Under the pieces are notes generated by a model. It did not search any database, was not told the origin of the DNA, and was given only the letters and a program-made list of their open reading frames with translations. A DNA stretch of 63,435 nucleotides, counting the filler, from Octopus bimaculoides (lineage: Eukaryota), in NCBI RefSeq assembly GCF_001194135.2. It is 9 parts of 8 records of this genome, joined end to end, with 100 filler letters (N's around TTAATTAATTAA, not from the genome) between each part and the next. Parts side by side here need not be neighbours in the genome. Positions count along the whole stretch, not along the records: positions 1 to 8,711 come from NC_068998.1; 8 more parts are not named here. One strand, given 5' to 3'. A program made the translations under genes and the position numbers. Below are positions 1 through 8,711 of the stretch, piece by piece; the stretch's first letter is position 1, and every line of letters begins with the position of its first letter.

Positions 1-545
1 GGTTACTGTAATTCACTCAATGAACAAAAAAAATTCCAATGATTCCAAGATGGGCCCCCCCCCCACCCACATTAGGAGGTCGGAGTGCTTGATTCCACGC
101 AAAAGATCCAAGGTTTTTTGTTTTCCTTAGTGAAACACATGAAGGTGTACTTCCCAAAATTTACCAAAATTCTATATGAATGGATAGAGTGGTGTGTGAA
201 GGAAAGATAAGATTATGATGAGAAACCAGGGTGTATCCACAAGGTAATATGTCCAAGAGAATGTGGTGATAGTAGAGTAAGGAAAGGTGGATAATGGTTA
301 CCAGAGTGCAATCCTATTCTACTTAAGCATCAGGTTTTGGAAGGATAGAGGAAGAAGGAACAGCAAGATATGGGTAGTAGTGGTAGTGGAAGGGGATAAT
401 CAATATACATAGATTCAGTGCTTTCTTAATTTTTGGTGGTATGGTATGGTGAGTAGAGGGGATGGCCAGGAAATGAGAGGGTACAGCTCATAGAAGAGAT
501 GTTGAAATGTGAGGGTATAAATAGGTACTAGGCACTGAGATGTAT
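1..545 (-). mobile_element. Highly degraded retroelement remnant, probably Penelope-like RT C-terminal region
   Basis: Purine-rich + strand. The minus strand gives fragments faintly resembling Penelope RT (LSFLD.., ..LCSDN.., .GY(P/T)). Shares GTTGAAATGTGAGGGTA with 42025-43075. No intact frame. Confidence 0.35.
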
Positions 546-599
546 GCACTATTCCATTATTTTATTGAGTGTTTCACCAAGCATGTGTAAGAGGCTGGA

Positions 600-830
600 T
601 CATCTGCAGCATCACATATTGCCAGTCAACACAATCTTCTGTCATCTATATCAGATGTAACATCTTGAGATCATTTTTATCACCTAGTCCCCCTGTCTTC
701 TTTCATCTCCCTCTTCCACAAATATCATTCAATTTGAATACTCAGCACTTGCTTATGCAGCTGTTACCTTCCATCTACATTGTATGCCCACACCATTGGA
801 ATTTCTTTTCTGGCATGTTGCATCTAATTC
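600..830 (-). mobile_element. RTE-clade LINE ORF 3' fragment (degraded)
   Basis: Minus strand reads approximately ..WCGHTM*MEGNSCISKC..DICGRGR*KKT..IKNDLKMLHL.., parallel to the better copy at 7630-7933. Confidence 0.65.
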
Positions 831-974
831 TCCTTATATCCACTTTGTCTCGCTATCTAAACTCCATTTATGTGCATGGCATATCCAGCAAAGCATGCTC
901 ACCTCATTTCTCTCTCTCTCTTTCTCTCTCTCCACACATATGTGTGTGTATACACATTTAGCTACATACATATA

Positions 975-1915
975 CAAGGGTTGGACAAAATAATGGAAAC
1001 ACCTTAAAATTTGAACAAATTTGTTTTAATATAGGGTAGGACTGCCTTTGGCAGTAATTACAGCTTGAATTATACAAGGTATGAACTCATACAAAGTTTG
1101 AATTCTTTCCAAAGGAATTTTTGTCCATTCTTCAGCTAAAACAGTCTCCAGTTCTTGTAGTGATGATGGTGAAGAATATTGACTCCTTACTTGTTTTTCT
1201 AAAATGCATAATAAATGTTCAATAATATTGAGATCTGGGGACTGTGGTGGCCCGATAAGATGCTTAACTTCACTAGAATGTTCCTCGTGCCATTCAGTAA
1301 CAACTTTAGCTGTGTGAATTGGAGCATTATCATCCTGAAAGATTGCTTTTCCCTCTGGAAACTGTTCTGCAACCATAGAATGAATTTGATCAGATAAAAT
1401 GCTTAAATAGTCTTGACTATTAATTCTGCCATGAAGGGAAACTTTTGGGCTGGTGGATTTCCAAGATATAGCCCCCCCCCCAGATCATCGCAAATCCTCC
1501 TCCATGTTTAACAGTTGGAGGAAGGCAGTCTGGGTCAATTGCTTCTTTTGGCTGTCTCCACATGTATACACAGCTGGTGGTCAGAAATAAAGTAAAGGAT
1601 GACTCGTCCAAGAAAATAACATTCTTCCACTGCTCTAGGGACCAATTCTGTAGGTTTTTACTCCACTCTAAATGCTTTGCAACGTTTGTTTTTGAAAGTC
1701 GTGGTTTTCTGATTGCAGCCCTCCCATCCAATCCAGCTTTGTGCAGCTCCCAGCAAACAGTTTTTGTGAAACTGGGTTCTCGAGGTGGTCATTAAGCTCT
1801 GCAGTAATTTTGGGGGCTGTACTTTTGTGATCCTTTCTAATAATTTATGTAAGAGTCCGATGGTCCCTATCTGAAAATTTTGGTTTTCTTCCAAGACTGT
1901 GGATCTGAGAGTTGA
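975..1915 (-). mobile_element. Tc1-like DNA transposon, 3' two-thirds; transposase pseudogene with DD36E spacing
   Basis: TA (973-974) then TIR-like CAAGGGTTGGACAAAATAATGGAAACACC. Minus-strand ORFs 1420-1731 (RKPRLS..WKNVIFLDES..VKHGGG..WG) and 1026-1376 (FQDDNAPIH..PPQSPDLNIIE) are joined by a +1 slip in the 10-C run at 1472-1481. A further frameshift and stop lie upstream (GRKPKFSDRDHRTLT*). Confidence 0.9.
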
Positions 1916-1920
1916 ATACG

Positions 1921-1988
1921 TTGAATAATTAACTGATCCTCCTGTATTTTCTTTTACCCCAAACCAGGAACTTTTCAGCACCCTTTCA
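1921..1988 (-). mobile_element. Terminal fragment of a mariner-type MITE (same family as 30394-30593)
   Basis: Minus strand TA+TGAAAGGGTGCTGAAAAGTTCCTGGTTTGGGGTAAAAGAAAATACAGGAGGATCAGTTAATTA matches the left end of the 30394 element. It truncates the Tc1 copy. Confidence 0.6.
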
Positions 1989-2052
1989 TACATACATACA
2001 TACATACATACATACATACATACATACATACATACATACATACGTACGTACA

Positions 2053-2083
<31 letters not shown>

Positions 2084-2110
2084 GTACGTATGCATGTATA
2101 ATACATATGC
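1989..2110. repeat. (TACA)n microsatellite
   Basis: Direct reading. Confidence 0.95.
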
Positions 2111-2516
2111 ACTTATCCATCATCACTACCACCACTAGAATTTGTGACTTGGTTCAGTTTTAAAGGTTGAGATTCAGAAAGCATTTATTTTTCTGCCACT
2201 ATTTTCCTGTGAGTTTTATCATTAATTTCTATAGCTTCTCATTTCAAAGAATTTCATGTTGTTCCATCAGGGACCATGCTCTTGCAATTACTAATATGAA
2301 TAATATTCTTCAAATAATGTTTGATTCTGTCATAGTAGCATTATTTGACAGGTTCAACACATCTCGTACTATTATTTAGTTTATTTTGGATCACAGATTT
2401 TTAGATGTAGGTGTTGTCATGATTATCTCTTACTCTGGGTTTTTTAAAACTCTTATATTGAGTGAAAATAAGTGTGAAACATGGGATATATGTACCTATG
2501 GTAATTGTAATTGTTA

Positions 2517-2556
2517 TCATCATCACCATCATTTAATGTCTGTTTTCCATGTGGGT
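2517..2556 (-). mobile_element. Short 3' tail of RTE-type LINE/SINE
   Basis: TCATCATCACCATCATTTAATGTCTGTTTTCCATG is the reverse complement of the shared ..CATGGAAAACGGACGTTAAA(TGA)n tail. Confidence 0.55.
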
Positions 2557-3720
2557 TGAACCATATTTCTATGAATTGGGCCTGCCTTAGTTATTTAGGC
2601 AGTGTTAAAGATTATTCAGAAAGTGGGGTTCTGCATGGTCAGATTATATCACTGAAAACTTTATCTTAAATTCCAAATAGTTTTTCTTTTGGGGAAAGAA
2701 AAACATGCACCTTGGCATTTGTTGACATGAAGCTTTGTTAATCCAATACCAGTTACAGAATAAGTGCAATATAAAATAATGAATTTTTGACATAACAGTG
2801 GACTTGGGGTAAGATGGAACTAAAATTGTAGGAATAGAATCTTATTTTTAATATTCTAATAATCTCTTAAGCAATGAATTCACTTTGTATTCATGTAAAA
2901 CTGTGAATTTGATTAAATTTCAGTGAATATGGCTTGATCATAAGTTGATGGCCAAAATTCACTTGCCCACATATCTGAGTAGATTTCTAAAAACACATGG
3001 TGAAGGCTGGAACTGGGACCTGCATGCAATCATTTAGTTTAATGTATGGCTGAATTATTTTTTTTAAAGTTAAATGTTGTGGCAATGAAATTTTGAGGTT
3101 GTTATTGTAACTTTTAGATCCAGATAGTTAAACAGCTTGGTTAACTTTTTTCCTGAATTTATCTGCTTATTACTGTTCATATTTTTGGAGATTAATAAGT
3201 CATCATTTCTATATATTCTGCTGTTAATAGCTTTAAATGTATTCAGGATTAAATCTATAACAAATAGTCCAATTAAGTTTGAAATTTCTGTGATTGCAAG
3301 CTCATAAGCTTGCAAAGAAAAGTTCTGTATTAGGTCTTTGATTTATATCCTATTGGTAAAAGACTAACTCAATTTTTAGTATGCATAATTATTATCTTAA
3401 TATCTGCAATATTAAGCAAGAATATAGAGTTTTTAAAAGTGAAAACTTAGCTACAGAAGGGCAATAATCAATTATATGAAATTACTGTTGTTCCAAAAAT
3501 GTACTGGGATATTTCCAGATATTATTTGCTACTTTTGCCTTTTATATATTATAATTTGTCTTAGTTCTGTTTATTTAGATTTTTTCAATCTGGTTGTGTT
3601 TATGGATCTTGATAGCAATATAAAGTTGTTTTAAGGCAAGAATATCTTCTATGTTAAAACTCAAAATTATGATTTTTATAGAATTTAATGTATTATTAGT
3701 GTTGTTAATAATTATTATTA

Positions 3721-4117
3721 GGCGCATGAGTGGCTGTGTGGTAAGTAGCTTGCTTACCAACCACATGGTTCCGGGTACAGTACCACTGCGCGGCATCTTG
3801 GGCAAATGTCTTCTACTATAGCCTCGGGCCCACCAAAGCCTTGTGAGTGGATTTGGTAGACGGAAACTGAAAGAAGGCCATCATATATATGCATATATAT
3901 GTGTGTGTGTGTATGTTTGTGTGTATGTCTTTGTCCCCCTTGCATTGCTTGACAACTGATGGTGGTGTGTTTATGTCCCCGTCACTTAGCAGTTCAGCAA
4001 AAGAGACTGATAGAATAAGTACTAGGCTTACAAAGAATAAGTTCCGGGGTCGATTTGCTCGACTAAAGGCGGTGCTCCAGCATGGCTGCAGTCAAATGAC
4101 TGAAACAAGTAAAAGAG
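3721..4117 (+). mobile_element. Full-length tRNA-derived SINE, family A (octopus-type)
   Basis: Head GGCGCATGAGTGGCTGTGTGGTAAG (A-box-like), GGTTCCGGGTACAGTACCAC (B-box-like), internal TA/TG tract, 3' end GGCGGTGCTCCAGCATGGC..GAAACAAGTAAAAGAG. Many homologous copies in the window. Confidence 0.9.
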
Positions 4118-5605
4118 TAGTAGTATTGCTGTTTTCCAGTAGATTTATTATTTATTCATTTCATGCAGTTTCTTTTTGTGTCTACCTTCACAAATAAGTT
4201 GTTTGATTCCAGGATATTCTTTATAGTATTTGCCTGCTACTGCTGAAGGGTGTTGCCTGTTTTTGAATTTTATGTTCTTCATTTTGAAGATGACCATTTT
4301 GAAAGGTCAGAGTTGGAAGACATTTTTTGGTTCTGAAATTGAATTTCAGTTTTCTTTATGTTTTTTATTTAACTTGTAGAAATAAAAGCCTTCCAGCATA
4401 TTCAGTTAACTAGGTCTTATGAATGTGACATTCAGTATTTATTAAAATGTTTGTGTTGTTATGTGCATACTTTCAGATGGAAATGTCTATTAGATAGCTA
4501 TTTCATTATTTAGCTGTTATGTTCAAAGTGCAGAATGGGTTCTACTTAATTAAGAGTGATTCACTAAAAATCTATACAAGTAACAAATCTGTACTGTAAC
4601 ACAATGTGAATTTAGAAAATCTGTGCTAGTAGCAAATCTAGATAATATTGAAGTAGTATTCTGGGATTTTAAAGAAACCATTAAATACGACAAATATATA
4701 GCTTAGTAAAAATTCATGGGGTTTAAACCACCACATTTTAGTAATGTCAAATACACATACTGGAAATATATCTTTCCATCTTGTAATGTTGCATTTACTC
4801 AAAAGAAGGTATTCAACACTAACAAACTTTGTTTATATACAATCATCCTATAATAATCAAATTACATCTATAATTCAAATTGCCAGAAAACAAATGACAT
4901 TAACACTCCTAGGTACAATTGCCATTCGCAAAATTTTTCTAGACAGTTGCTATAGACTGAATCAATTAGTGTTCAATGAAAAGCAACTGTCTAGTAAAAT
5001 TTGTTATCTATGCAGCAACTATCACATTTGATATTAATCAGAATTGAATAGATAACATCAGAATAACAGCAAGTCAATTTAATATTAGATATTATCAGAA
5101 TTATACTTTAGTGCATTACAAAGATAATTCAACATAAGCAAAAAGACCCATATTGAAAAAATAATAATTTAATCTACAATAGTATACAGCATCTTTTAAA
5201 GAAAGCAATACTTATATATAATCTAAATCATTCTGTAATTTAAGTATTATTGTGAAATGCTTAATTGTAATACTAAAACATTGGATAATGATATTGAGTT
5301 AATTTTGTCATGCAAAAATACCATCTTAGATACCATAATTGCATTCCACTTAATATATACGTAAATACTCATAAAATGCAATGGGTTTTTTTTTTAAATA
5401 ACTATTTAATATTATGAACATAAAAATATTGTTTGAATAAGCACTCCTTAAAAATAACTCTTCTGAACTTAGGAGAGTATTTGCATAGAGAGATTGAAAC
5501 AAAATAGCTCTAAATAACTTTGTATAGCAGGTTGCCTAATCAAAATCACATCAAAATATTCTTTGAAGATTAATATATTAATTATCAATAGACTCTTTAG
5601 AACAT

Positions 5606-6235
5606 ATACACACACATACATATCTGCATCATCAACATAGACCACTGACTAACACAGCCACCAATAAAAAATTTGGAACATAGTTACAAAATCATAGCAT
5701 CATAAAACCATAAGAAAAAAATTACATCTTATCATATAAAAGTGGAACCACAGAATTTACCCCACATTCCAAGACATGTAGTATAAAAATTTAAAGTTGT
5801 AATTTGAATTTATATGATCCAGATATGTATATGTATGTATGTGTGTGTATGTATGTATGTGTATAGATATAATAGTTAAATGCTTTAACACTAATCACAC
5901 ACACTTCTTTTCATTTTTGGAGAGCAACAGGTGTACATGTGCAGCATTTAGGCTCTTAACTATTATATGCATGCGAGCATACATACATACATACACACAC
6001 ATACACACATATACATATCTGGATCGTATAAATTCAAATTACAACTTTAAATTTTTATACTACATGTCTTGGAATGTGGGGTAAATTCTGTGGTTCCACT
6101 TTTATATGATAAGATGTAATTTTTTTCTTATGGTTTTATGATGCTATGATTTTGTAACTATGTTCCAAATTTTTTATTGGTGGCTGTGTTAGTCAGTGGT
6201 CTATGTTGATGATGCAGATATGTATGTGTGTGTAT
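5606..6235. repeat. Long near-perfect inverted repeat: arms 5606-5860 and 5981-6235 (255 bp each), 120-bp spacer
   Basis: Manual reverse-complement comparison found no indels and 2 mismatches (near 5814/6027 and 5835/6006). Confidence 0.97.
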
Positions 6236-6300
6236 CTATACTATAAAAGGCAAATTTTCTCTGTGTGTGTGTATGTTTAAAATTCATGCATTTACACAAT
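6235..6300 (+). mobile_element. Helitron-like 5' terminus
   Basis: A|TCTATACTATAAAAGGCAAATTTTCTCTGTGTGTG has the same architecture as the 5' ends at 25492 and 37853. Confidence 0.45.
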
Positions 6301-6371
6301 TCCAAATTTCTTCGATTAAACAATCGCAATTAATATTCTAAATACAATTTGTTAGGTCACTGCGTCATATA

Positions 6372-6400
6372 CTAGCAGAGATACTTGACCTTGCTCAGGA
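6372..6400 (-). mobile_element. Helitron-like 3' terminus
   Basis: Minus strand CCTGAGCAAGGTCAAG-TATCTCTG-CTAG|T parallels CCCGGACAAGGTCGGG-TTATACTG-CTAG|T at 39870-39898. Confidence 0.55.
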
Positions 6401-6426
6401 TTAAAATGGCATAGTTCTTTTATTGT

Positions 6427-6716
6427 TTTACTTGTTTTGCTCATGTGATTGTCGCCATGCTGGAGCACCAGCATTGGTCGAACAAATCGACCACAGGATT
6501 TATTCATTGCAAGCCTAGTACTTTTATTCTATCAGTGTCTTTTGCCAAACCGGTAAGTTATGGAAACATAAACAGAGCAACATCGGTTGTCAAGCAATGG
6601 TGAGGGTACAAACACAGAAACACACACACAAATATACACATATATATGACAGCCTTCTTTCAGTTTCTGTGTGTACAAAATCCACTCACAAGGCTTTTGT
6701 CGGCCTGAATCTATAG

Positions 6717-6718
<2 letters not shown>
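6427..6718 (-). mobile_element. SINE family A, lacking head
   Basis: Reverse complement of the family A body and 3' end (CCATGCTGGAGCACC.., CAAGCCTAGTACTT.., AATCCACTCACAAGGCTTT). Confidence 0.85.
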
Positions 6719-6776
<58 letters not shown>

Positions 6777-6843
6777 CATATCCATATGTATACACATATA
6801 TATCCATATAAATACATACATATATATATATATCCATGTATAT

Positions 6844-6898
<55 letters not shown>

Positions 6899-6921
6899 CA
6901 TACATATACATATATATATAT
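6719..6921. repeat. Compound (TA)/(TG)/(CA) microsatellite
   Basis: Direct reading. Confidence 0.95.
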
Positions 6922-6990
6922 AGGCGCAGGAGTGGCTGTGGGGTAAGTAGCTTGCTTACCAACCACATGGTTCTGGGTTCATTCCCACTG
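6922..6990 (+). mobile_element. SINE family A head, cut by N gap
   Basis: AGGCGCAGGAGTGGCTGTGGGGTAAGTAGCTTGCTTACCAACCACATGGTTCTGGGTTCATTCCCACTG. Confidence 0.85.
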
Positions 6991-7592
6991 NNNNNNNNNN
7001 NNNNNNNNNNNNNNNNNNNNNNNNNNNNNNNNNNNNNNNNNNNNNNNNNNNNNNNNNNNNNNNNNNNNNNNNNNNNNNNNNNNNNNNNNNNNNNNNNNNN
7101 NNNNNNNNNNNNNNNNNNNNNNNNNNNNNNNNNNNNNNNNNNNNNNNNNNNNNNNNNNNNNNNNNNNNNNNNNNNNNNNNNNNNNNNNNNNNNNNNNNNN
7201 NNNNNNNNNNNNNNNNNNNNNNNNNNNNNNNNNNNNNNNNNNNNNNNNNNNNNNNNNNNNNNNNNNNNNNNNNNNNNNNNNNNNNNNNNNNNNNNNNNNN
7301 NNNNNNNNNNNNNNNNNNNNNNNNNNNNNNNNNNNNNNNNNNNNNNNNNNNNNNNNNNNNNNNNNNNNNNNNNNNNNNNNNNNNNNNNNNNNNNNNNNNN
7401 NNNNNNNNNNNNNNNNNNNNNNNNNNNNNNNNNNNNNNNNNNNNNNNNNNNNNNNNNNNNNNNNNNNNNNNNNNNNNNNNNNNNNNNNNNNNNNNNNNNN
7501 NNNNNNNNNNNNNNNNNNNNNNNNNNNNNNNNNNNNNNNNNNNNNNNNNNNNNNNNNNNNNNNNNNNNNNNNNNNNNNNNNNNNNNNNNAAA

Positions 7593-7629
<37 letters not shown>

Positions 7630-7631
<2 letters not shown>

Positions 7632-8390
7632 TGCACACACAACAGAGTGTAAGCACCCTCAGAGAAATGTTCGACATAAGAAGCATCACATGTGGTGTGC
7701 AAGAGAAATGACTGCGCTGGTATAGTCATGTGCTGCGTATGGATGAGGAGAGCTGTGTGAAAAAATGTCACTCCCTAACAGTGGAAGGAACCCATGGAAG
7801 AGGGAGATCCAGCAAGACATGGGATGAGGTGGTGAAGCATGACTTTTGAATGTTGGGCCTCACAGAGGCAATGATGAAAGACCGAGACCTCTGGAGACAT
7901 GCTGTGACTGAGAAGACACAGCAACTAAAGTGAGATCACACTCATAGCCTACACCAGTGTCGCATAACCAGCCCCTTTAAAAAGTACCTCTGAATCGGCA
8001 GGTGACATGCCATGCTTGAGGAGACCTGTTGAGCCAAGTAAAATCAAAATCAAAATTAAATCAAATCAAATCACAATCAAATGGAAATTGTAGTTGTGGC
8101 CGATGCCAGTGCCACCTGACTGGCTCCCATGCTGGTGGCACACAATAAGCACCATTCATGCGTGGATCATTTCCAATGCCGCCTGACTTGCTCCCCATGT
8201 AGTTAGCACATAAAAAGCACCCACTACACTCTTGGAGTGGTTGGCGTTAGGAAGGGCATCCAGCTGTAGAAACACTGCCAGATCAAATTGGAGCCTAGTG
8301 TGGCTTCTTAGCTTTCCAATCCCCAGTCAAACTATCCACCCCATGCCAACATGAAAAACAGACGTTAAACGATGATGAGGATGATGATCT
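7630..8390 (+). mobile_element. RTE-clade LINE 3' end with 3' UTR and (GAT)n tail
   Basis: Reads SVSTLREMFDIRSITCGVQEK*LRWYSHVLRMDEESCVKKCHSLTVEGTHGRGRSSKTWDEVVKHDF*MLGLTEAMMKDRDLWRHAVTEK, ending at ~7933. The UTR ends GGAGTGGTTGGCGTTAGGAAGGGCATCCAGC..GACGTTAAACGATGATGAGGATGATG. Confidence 0.88.
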
Positions 8391-8429
8391 ATATATACAT
8401 ACATACATACATATATATATATATATCTT

Positions 8430-8711
8430 ACGAAACAACCACTTCATGTTTGACAATACTTTCTACCGACAAAAATCCGGAATTGCTATGGGCACTAGGG
8501 CAGCTCTAGTCATTGCGAACCTAACAATGGGTTACTTGGAAATAATAATATACCAGGAATCTTTATCCACCTTTGGAAACACCCTTTCCCAATACATAAA
8601 AGAAAATTTGAAAAGGTTCCTGGACGACTGTTTCATACTCTGGAATGAAAACACAGATGAACTCTTGAAATTCAAAAGTCTATTGAACAGTGTCAACCCA
8701 AACATACAGTT
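8430..8711 (+). mobile_element. Penelope-like element reverse transcriptase fragment
   Basis: Open frame LRNNHFMFDNTFYRQKSGIAMGTRAALVIANLTMGYLE..RFLDDCF..LNSVNPNIQF. The Q..GIAMG and R(F/Y)LDD motifs are typical of Penelope RT. Cut by a linker gap. Confidence 0.85.

What the first reader, a model, noticed from the sequence alone, without database searches (positions are those of the whole stretch)
5606..6235. 255-bp inverted repeat, 99% identical, enclosing a unique 120-bp spacer
Seen: arms 5606-5860 and 5981-6235 are exact reverse complements except for 2 substitutions, with no indels. The arm sequence is complex and matches no other repeat in this window. It is by far the least diverged duplication here. 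Inference: it could be a very recent foldback/long-TIR element (TA lies just inside both outer ends), a replication template-switch duplication, a substrate for flipping of the spacer, or a ~250-bp dsRNA stem if transcribed (ADAR editing, which is pervasive in coleoids, or endo-siRNA). The segment looks CpG-poor, consistent with a transcribed gene body.
Basis: partly seen in the sequence, partly recalled or inferred. Interest (0 to 1): 0.72.

Follow-up and report, generated by a model that had tools for sequence, protein, structure and literature searches.

The report
Near-perfect 255-bp inverted duplication, noncoding
The 630-bp hairpin-forming inverted repeat is present in the sequence as described, but it lies in noncoding, transposon- and microsatellite-rich DNA, shows no sign of function, and belongs to a kind of structure already reported as unusually common in octopus genomes.

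Summary
Arms 5606-5860 and 5981-6235 are reverse complements at 253 of 255 positions with no indel. The longest exact stretch is 209 nt, against 17 nt or less in shuffles.

Two refinements:
- The "unique 120-bp spacer" holds a further perfect 13-nt inverted repeat (5867-5879 / 5956-5968). The true loop is about 76 nt (5880-5955), with a small unmatched patch of 6 versus 12 nt beside it.
- All four arm ends lie in CA/TACA-type microsatellite. Each arm carries the 13-mer ATATCTGSATCAT (S = C or G) at both ends, in inverted orientation.

The two mismatches are both transitions, one CpG/TpG and one inside a microsatellite. Both lie in the inner 46 nt. I found no target-site duplication longer than 5 nt, no coding potential, no Rfam family and no second copy of the arm core in the window.

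Copy number in the source genome could not be tested, because none of the searchable collections holds this genome.

My best reading (about 0.4) is a young local inverted duplication made by template switching or fold-back synthesis, seeded by a pre-existing quasi-palindrome and microsatellite. A hairpin or foldback MITE (about 0.3) and a draft-assembly artefact (about 0.12) remain open. The endo-siRNA idea is disfavoured for molluscs. ADAR editing would require transcription, which I could not test. Interest is low to moderate.

The parts
5606..5860 (+). Left arm of the inverted repeat (255 nt, 29% GC, 0 CpG).
   Evidence: 253/255 complementary to 5981-6235, no indel.
5981..6235 (-). Right arm (reverse complement of the left arm; 1 CpG, at 6025-6026).
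5861..5980 (.). It is really patch + 13-nt stem + 76-nt loop + 13-nt stem + patch.
5867..5879 (+). Inner 13-nt perfect inverted repeat, left half (ATATAATAGTTAA).
   Evidence: exact match to the reverse complement of 5956-5968; 0/2000 shuffles reach 13 nt.
5956..5968 (-). Inner 13-nt perfect inverted repeat, right half (TTAACTATTATAT).
5880..5955 (.). True unpaired loop (76 nt), unique in the window.
5861..5866 (+). Unmatched patch, left side (GTATAG, 6 nt). It lies opposite 5969-5980.
   Evidence: a 6-nt length difference between the halves.
5969..5980 (+). Unmatched patch, right side (GCATGCGAGCAT, 12 nt; holds the spacer's only CpG).
5620..5632 (+). Motif ATATCTGCATCAT, outer end of the left arm.
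   Evidence: the motif occurs 4 times with 0-1 mismatch, only at the ends of the two arms.
5814..5826 (-). Motif ATATCTGGATCAT, inner end of the left arm, inverted relative to 5620-5632. Holds mismatch site 5815.
   Evidence: arm 209-239 matches the reverse complement of 5602-5632 at 87%.
6015..6027 (+). Motif ATATCTGGATCGT, inner end of the right arm. Holds the CpG at 6025-6026.
6209..6221 (-). Motif ATATCTGCATCAT, outer end of the right arm.
5824..5864 (+). Compound (TGTA/TG)n microsatellite at the inner end of the left arm. Its mirror image is at about 5977-6017. Holds mismatch site 5835 (TA versus TG).
5606..5621 (+). Microsatellite-like outer terminus ATACACACACATACAT. Its mirror image is at 6220-6235.

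Best explanation
This is a young, passive, noncoding inverted duplication at a single locus.

Proposed origin: before the event, the site already carried a small imperfect palindrome. This was the 13-nt inverted repeat around the 76-nt loop, plus oppositely oriented (TGTA)n and (TACA)n microsatellite on either side. During replication or break repair, a growing strand that had reached the second microsatellite paired back onto the first. It then copied about 240 nt of the neighbouring unique sequence in reverse. It returned to its original template inside the CA/TACA tract at the far end of that sequence. The product was a second, inverted copy of the arm.

Since then, two transitions have accumulated, one of them a CpG-to-TpG change. 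The 6-versus-12-nt patch either predates the event or arose afterwards.

The product does nothing on its own. It can extrude as a cruciform. It offers 255 bp of homology for flipping or deleting the loop. If it lies in a transcript, it would give a 255-bp double-stranded RNA of the kind ADAR hyper-edits.

What is shown: the anatomy. What is inferred: the order of events, the mechanism and the young age. What is untested: any transcription.
For: - All four arm boundaries fall in low-complexity CA/TACA tracts that exist in both orientations, which are natural microhomology for two template switches.
- A nested quasi-palindrome is present at the centre. The 13-nt perfect inverted repeat is significant at 0/2000 shuffles, and it sits next to inverted microsatellites.
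- No target-site duplication longer than 5 nt flanks the unit or either arm, and the short matches found are AT-rich chance hits.
- The arm core is single-copy in the window, and it was assembled through in a gapped draft scaffold (599 N at 6991-7589). That is easier to reconcile with a low-copy sequence.
- The flanks are unrelated to each other, so the sequence is not a contig folded back on itself.
- The arm differences look like ordinary germline mutations: one CpG/TpG and one TA/TG inside a microsatellite.
- Template switching is documented to homogenise and extend short imperfect inverted repeats (PMC13100816, PMC8794818, PMC5453318).
Against: - Documented template-switch expansions are tens of nt long (7-12 nt seeds growing to 24-48 nt in yeast, PMC13100816). 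This event would be about five to ten times larger and a net insertion.
- The 6-versus-12-nt unmatched patch between the 13-nt seed and the long arms is not predicted by simple extension from that seed. It needs either the microsatellite as the real seed or a later mutation.
- The 13-mer motif at both ends of each arm is not explained by this model, and it gives each arm a transposon-like look.
- The region is full of mobile elements.
- Genome-wide copy number and the ancestral state were not testable.
- High arm identity could reflect arm-to-arm gene conversion rather than youth.
Confidence: 0.4

Rival explanations
1. The 630-bp unit is one copy of a nonautonomous hairpin-type DNA transposon (a palindromic MITE or foldback-like element). 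The arms are its long terminal inverted repeats, the repeated 13-mer could be a protein-binding site, and the TA at each end could be a Tc1/mariner-type target duplication.
For: - The size (630 bp), AT-richness and lack of coding potential fit a MITE.
- The outer boundaries are sharp.
- The 13-mer is present at both ends of each arm and nowhere else in the window.
- TA lies at 5607-5608 and 6233-6234.
- The neighbourhood is transposon-rich, including a Tc1-like DDE_3 remnant and SINE-like copies.
- Octopus has an exceptional density of near-perfect local inverted repeats, and in the frog the equivalent load comes from a palindromic Harbinger repeat (PMC5625713).
Against: - No target-site duplication beyond a TA embedded in a TACA/CA microsatellite.
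- The termini are microsatellite-like (ATACACAC / CACACAC) and, as far as I recall, do not match the usual Tc1/mariner, hAT, PIF or piggyBac ends. That comparison rests on memory and was not tested against a library.
- The two 13-mers in each arm are inverted relative to each other, not direct as in IR/DR-type Tc1 elements.
- There are no tandem subrepeats in the arms, unlike classical foldback elements.
- An arm folded alone is not unusually stable (z = -1.3).
- No second copy was seen, but only 8.7 kb could be searched.
Confidence: 0.3
2. The second arm is an assembly artefact of a short-read draft. A single genomic arm, or two alleles of it, was placed twice in opposite orientation during scaffolding or gap closure.
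For: - The scaffold is a gapped draft, with 599 N only 755 bp downstream of the repeat.
- A 209-nt exact inverted repeat is longer than typical assembly k-mers, so it would collapse in a de Bruijn graph and need secondary resolution.
- The two differences, one a CpG transition, could equally be heterozygous SNPs.
Against: - The flanks on the two sides are unrelated, so this is not a contig folded on itself.
- The loop is unique genomic-looking sequence with its own 13-nt stem and an asymmetric 6-versus-12-nt patch, which a duplicated placement would not create.
- No run of N or linker sits at any junction.
Confidence: 0.12
3. It is an older palindrome kept nearly identical by arm-to-arm gene conversion, whatever its origin. 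On this reading the high identity does not mean the repeat is recent.
For: - Identity is perfect over the outer 209 nt, and both substitutions lie in the inner 46 nt.
- Homology continues in degraded form beyond the arms: inward 16/19 after a 6-nt indel, outward 5/8.
- That is the pattern expected if only a core tract is being homogenised.
Against: - The outward extension is not significant.
- The inner degradation lies in mutable microsatellite.
- With only two substitutions, the clustering is weak evidence (about 0.03, chosen after seeing the data).
- Arms of 255 bp are short for efficient conversion.
Confidence: 0.08
4. It is a functional hairpin-RNA locus: a transcribed long stem that is processed into small RNAs, or that serves as a regulated ADAR target or a flip switch.
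For: - The predicted RNA stem is long and almost perfect.
- On the + strand, one of the two mismatches is a G·U wobble.
- Octopus shows extreme hyper-editing of repeat-derived dsRNA (PMC5625713).
Against: - There is no evidence of transcription, no promoter information and no conservation data.
- No Rfam family matches except sub-threshold microsatellite 'miRNA' hits.
- Such structures are reported as very numerous in octopus, so most are expected to be by-products.
Confidence: 0.05

Closest known systems
Template-switch (quasi-palindrome) mutations that extend and perfect short inverted repeats (Ripley model; PMC13100816, PMC8794818, PMC5453318)
   Same: An inverted copy lies next to its source. 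A short imperfect inverted repeat sits at the centre. Switch points lie in microhomology. There is no target-site duplication. The result is a near-perfect hairpin made in a single event.
   Different: Published cases have arms of roughly 10-50 nt. Here the arms are 255 nt (about 275 nt with the inner stem) and the event would be a net insertion. The ancestral state is not available to prove the event.
Palindromic or hairpin MITEs (for example the ~200-bp palindromic Harbinger repeat of Xenopus, PMC5625713) and foldback transposons (Drosophila FB, Tetris, Galileo; PMC4079207, PMC4168063)
   Same: A short, AT-rich, noncoding unit that is almost entirely two inverted arms with a small loop. It forms tight dsRNA if transcribed. 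The neighbourhood is transposon-rich.
   Different: No demonstrable target-site duplication. The termini are microsatellite-like. There are no tandem subrepeats in the arms. Multi-copy status is unknown.
Neighbouring inverted repeat pairs as ADAR hyper-editing substrates (inverted Alu pairs in primates; repeat-derived dsRNA across Metazoa, very abundant in O. bimaculoides, PMC5625713)
   Same: Two inverted copies >95% identical lie within 2 kb of each other. That is exactly the class counted in that study as potential long, near-perfect dsRNA.
   Different: The arm here is not a recognised interspersed repeat, and transcription and editing are untested.
Drosophila hairpin-RNA (hpRNA) genes that give endo-siRNAs
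   Same: A long, near-perfect intramolecular stem with a short loop.
   Different: No evidence of expression or targets. A dedicated endo-siRNA pathway was not detected in molluscs (PMC12479628).

Membership tests
Foldback (FB-like) transposon | Long terminal inverted repeats built of tandem subrepeats | tested here: not met
   TRF and the repeat finder show only microsatellite at the arm ends. The 180-nt arm core has no internal tandem repeat.
Foldback (FB-like) transposon / MITE | Target-site duplication flanking the unit | tested here: inconclusive
   The longest direct repeats across plausible boundaries are 4-5 nt, AT-rich, and placed asymmetrically. Only a TA embedded in the terminal TACA/CA tract is compatible with a duplication.
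Foldback (FB-like) transposon / MITE | Many dispersed copies with different flanks | not testable with these tools
   There is no other copy in the 8.7-kb window. Exact arm 23-mer and SINE-like 24-mer scans found nothing in the metagenome and viral collections. The protein-anchored loci I fetched come from other organisms.
MITE | Short (<800 bp), noncoding, with terminal inverted repeats | tested here: met
   The unit is 630 bp. No reading frame that lies within the repeat exceeds 45 codons (the 81-aa ATG ORF 5839-6084, 88 codons stop to stop, spans the spacer and part of the right arm), and there is no Pfam hit. The arms are inverted repeats.
Tc1/mariner IR/DR-type element or derivative | Two transposase-binding repeats per arm in direct orientation | tested here: not met
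   The 13-mer occurs twice per arm, but the two copies are inverted relative to each other.
Tc1/mariner IR/DR-type element or derivative | TA duplication and CAGT-type termini; similarity to a resident transposase-bearing element | tested here: not met
   The termini read (TA)CACACAC. The arm has no similarity to the Tc1-like remnant at 1026-1731 or to its surroundings. The expected terminal consensus is from memory.
Template-switch / quasi-palindrome expansion | Inverted copy adjacent to its source, with a short inverted repeat or microhomology at the switch points | tested here: met
   A 13-nt central inverted repeat, and inverted (TGTA)n/(TACA)n and CA-rich tracts at all four arm boundaries.
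Template-switch / quasi-palindrome expansion | Ancestral or allelic state with a single arm | not testable with these tools
   No related genome is accessible.
Template-switch / quasi-palindrome expansion | Size range of documented events (tens of nt) | tested here: not met
   The arms are 255 nt, against 24-48 nt in the yeast survey (PMC13100816).
ADAR hyper-editing substrate | Long, nearly perfect intramolecular dsRNA | tested here: met
   Predicted stem of 255 bp with one A·C mismatch and one G·U pair, -460 kcal/mol.
ADAR hyper-editing substrate | Transcribed, with A-to-G clusters in RNA reads | not testable with these tools
   No RNA data available.
hpRNA / endo-siRNA locus | Dicer-dependent siRNA pathway in the taxon and 21-23-nt duplex reads from the stem | not testable with these tools
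Fold-back assembly artefact | Mirror symmetry continues into the flanks, or a linker/adaptor sits in the loop | tested here: not met
   Symmetry stops at 5605/6236. The flanks are unrelated, and the loop is ordinary unique sequence.
Fold-back assembly artefact | Reads do not support both arms | not testable with these tools
   No read data available.

The most novel reading that the evidence does not exclude
The unit is a copy of a currently or very recently active, undescribed palindromic DNA transposon family of cephalopods. Such a family would account for part of the exceptional load of near-perfect dsRNA-forming loci, and of ADAR hyper-editing, reported for octopus.
Probability: 0.12. Interest if true: 0.5.

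Novelty: new member of a known kind. Interest (0 to 1): 0.2.

Why it matters
If the template-switch reading holds, this is an unusually large example of a mutation class best known from events of tens of bases. It shows how microsatellite-rich genomes can create long perfect hairpins in one step. If the transposon reading holds, it points to a young hairpin element family in a cephalopod genome. In either case the locus is one more potential source of long double-stranded RNA in an animal group noted for RNA editing. On present evidence, however, it is one of many such loci, with nothing to mark it as functional.

Tried and rejected
- **Genome-wide copy number.** These collections therefore hold no DNA of this organism.
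- **Exact-ORF look-ups.** The spacer/arm ORF and the transposase ORF are not on record.
- **Protein route to the same genome.**
  - The possible reverse-transcriptase fragment gave one 49% hit.
  - The Tc1-like fragment gave at best 79-80% hits on ENA contigs.
  - The two fetched loci (L001, L002) have no match to the SINE-like element or the arm, and a CpG observed/expected ratio of 0.7 against 0.22 in the window. They come from other organisms, so I stopped there.
- **Rfam.** Only sub-threshold 'miRNA' hits on microsatellites, which I rejected as low-complexity artefacts.
- **tRNA scan.** No genes found.
- **Each arm as an independent MITE inserted twice.** Rejected because the symmetry continues into the spacer, via the significant 13-nt repeat, and because an arm alone does not fold better than shuffles.
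- **Simple fold-back contig.** Rejected because the flanks differ.
- **Literature search for the SINE-like sequence strings.**

Full report
**1. The observation**

The repeat finder reports arms 5598-5860 and 5981-6243 at 98% complementarity. Inside them, 253 of 255 positions pair with no indel. The mismatches are at 5815/6026 and 5835/6006.

The longest exact inverted match is 209 nt. Thirty dinucleotide-preserving shuffles of 1-6990 gave 11-17 nt. Folded as one strand, 5590-6250 gives a single long stem of -460 kcal/mol as RNA and -301 kcal/mol as DNA, with z about -55 in both cases.

The arm core has no other copy in the window. Only the microsatellite ends match other places. All other duplications in the window are 78-86% identical. 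CpG is strongly depleted: 0 and 1 CpG in the arms against about 5 expected, and 42 against 192 expected over 1-6990.

**2.

- **The spacer is not all unique.** A gapped alignment continues the symmetry inward: 5861-5879 pairs with 5956-5974 at 16/19 after a 6-nt length difference. The core of this is an exact 13-mer, 5867-5879 against 5956-5968. None of 2000 shuffles of the spacer reaches 13 nt; the maximum was 11. The structure is therefore: 255-nt stem, a 6-versus-12-nt internal bulge (5861-5866 / 5969-5980), a 13-nt stem, and a 76-nt loop (5880-5955).
- **All four arm boundaries are in low-complexity sequence.** The outer ends read ATACACACACATACAT. The inner ends are a compound (TGTA/TG)n tract.
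- **Each arm carries the 13-mer ATATCTGSATCAT (S = C or G) next to the microsatellite at both ends, in inverted orientation.** The four copies are at 5620-5632, 5814-5826, 6015-6027 and 6209-6221, and they are the only good matches in the window. Each arm therefore has terminal-inverted-repeat-like ends of about 31 nt at 87%. An arm folded alone, however, is no more stable than shuffles (z = -1.3).
- **Both arm differences are transitions.** At 5815/6026 the right arm has CpG where the left has TpG, the classic decay of methylated CpG. At 5835/6006 the difference is TA against TG inside the microsatellite. Both lie in the inner 46 nt.
- **No convincing target-site duplication.** Scanning all plausible boundaries of the whole unit and of each arm gave only 4-5-nt AT-rich matches in asymmetric positions.

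**3. Context**

- The piece is a gapped draft scaffold, with 599 N at 6991-7589.
- It is dense in mobile-element debris. A Tc1-like transposase remnant on the minus strand at 1026-1731 has a Pfam DDE_3 hit.
- It holds three copies or fragments of a roughly 400-nt SINE-like element that has an internal microsatellite. These are 3721-4125 (+), 6421-6716 (-), and a head at 6923-6990 (+) that runs into the gap.
- An ORF at 8446-8711 looks to me like a reverse-transcriptase fragment. It has no Pfam hit, and its only database relative is 49% identical.
- The inverted repeat lies in 24-30% GC unique sequence between two of the SINE-like copies.
- No reading frame that lies within the repeat exceeds 45 codons; the longest one touching it is the 81-aa ATG ORF at 5839-6084 (88 codons stop to stop), which spans the spacer and part of the right arm. 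Nothing there matches Pfam.
- Rfam gives only sub-threshold 'miRNA' matches on microsatellites.

**4. What could not be done**

The deciding question is whether the arm is multi-copy in the source genome.

- Exact scans of an arm 23-mer, and of a 24-mer shared by two SINE-like heads, found nothing in the metagenome and viral contig collections.
- Window ORFs are not on record.
- The best protein relatives of the transposase remnant are 79-80% identical. The two long contigs I fetched have no match to the SINE-like element or the arm, and a CpG observed/expected ratio of 0.7 against 0.22 here. They belong to other organisms.
The literature comparisons below are conditional on that statement.

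**5. Explanations**

*Local inverted duplication by template switching or fold-back synthesis (about 0.4).*

The centre of the structure is a quasi-palindrome: the 13-nt repeat plus inverted microsatellites. This is the substrate on which polymerase template switching is known to perfect and lengthen inverted repeats (PMC13100816, PMC8794818, PMC5453318).

- For: both the start and the end of the copied segment lie in CA/TACA tracts that offer microhomology; there is no target-site duplication; the sequence is unique in the window; and the flanks are unrelated.
- Against: the event would be five to ten times longer than documented cases; the 6-versus-12-nt bulge needs the microsatellite, not the 13-mer, to be the priming site, or else a later mutation; and the paired 13-mers in each arm are left unexplained.

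*Hairpin or foldback MITE (about 0.3).*

- For: size, AT-richness, sharp outer ends, the repeated 13-mer and the transposon-rich setting all fit. In the frog, the comparable load of hairpins is a palindromic Harbinger repeat (PMC5625713).
- Against: the defining features that could be tested are not met or are inconclusive. There is no real target-site duplication. The termini are microsatellite-like. The 13-mers are in the wrong relative orientation for IR/DR-type Tc1 elements. The arms have no subrepeats.

*Draft-assembly artefact (about 0.12).*

- For: a 209-nt exact inverted repeat is hard for a k-mer assembler, a gap is close by, and the two differences could be allelic.
- Against: the asymmetric bulge, the unique loop and the unrelated flanks are not what a doubled placement would give.

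*Older palindrome homogenised by gene conversion (about 0.08) and functional hairpin-RNA locus (about 0.05).*

Neither is excluded. [quoted passage not shown]

**6. Comparison with what is known, and verdict**

Porath et al. (PMC5625713) measured the fraction of random 50-bp genomic sites that have a >95% identical inverted partner within 2 kb. They found O. bimaculoides, at 4.4 x 10^-3, to be exceptionally high among 19 species. They also showed that such loci are the main targets of ADAR hyper-editing.

If the window is octopus DNA, this locus is one example of an already described, very numerous class. It works like the inverted repeat pairs that feed ADAR, provided it is transcribed, which is unknown. 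It cannot be filed as a member of any named transposon family.

I rate it a new member of a known kind, of low to moderate interest (0.2). The most novel reading still open is that it belongs to a young, undescribed palindromic transposon family of cephalopods (probability about 0.12).

Noticed in passing
window 3721-4125 (+), 6421-6716 (-), 6923-6990 (+): Three copies or fragments of a roughly 400-nt SINE-like element. Its head contains what look by eye like pol III A- and B-box motifs, and it has an internal TA/TG microsatellite. The first two copies form a 78-84% inverted pair 2.3 kb apart that brackets the finding. The third runs into the scaffold gap. ARAGORN and Rfam do not call a tRNA in any of them.
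   Followed up: partly
window 6991-7589: A run of 599 N (scaffold gap) immediately after a long (TG)n(TA)n microsatellite at 6733-6922 and a SINE-like head. This marks the piece as a gapped draft assembly, which bears on how far the inverted repeat can be trusted.
   Followed up: partly
window 1026-1731 (-), with a second fragment near 1-100 (-): A degraded Tc1-like transposase, broken by frameshifts (Pfam DDE_3, E = 1e-10 for 1026-1376). The direct repeat TTCCAAGAT..CCCCCCCC at 43-64 and 1459-1480 suggests a second partial copy of the same coding region. The best database relatives are 79-80% identical, on unnamed ENA contigs.
   Followed up: partly
window 8446-8711 (+) and about 7700-7960 (+): An open frame running off the end of the piece (FYRQKSGIAMGT...), and a short frame (YSHVLRMDEES...GRGRSSKTWDEVV). 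By eye these resemble reverse-transcriptase and non-LTR retrotransposon C-terminal sequence. Neither has a Pfam hit, and the first has a single 49% relative in the protein collection.
   Followed up: partly
window 1987-2082, 6728-6927, 5960-6014: Rfam 'evalue' hits to mir-297, mir-1277, mir-466 and similar families all lie on CATA/TG/TA microsatellites and score far below gathering thresholds. They are low-complexity false positives.
   Followed up: yes
window 1-6990 versus 7590-8711: CpG observed/expected is 0.22 left of the gap and 0.35 right of it. GC rises from about 0.33 to 0.42. The strong depletion suggests germline-methylated DNA.
   Followed up: no
L001, L002 (ENA ERZ25067582, ERZ21867824): Long contigs in 'metagenome' assemblies carry Tc1-like transposase remnants 77-80% identical to the window's. 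They have eukaryote-like gene-poor sequence and a CpG observed/expected ratio of about 0.7. They are probably host or eukaryote DNA from another invertebrate.
   Followed up: partly
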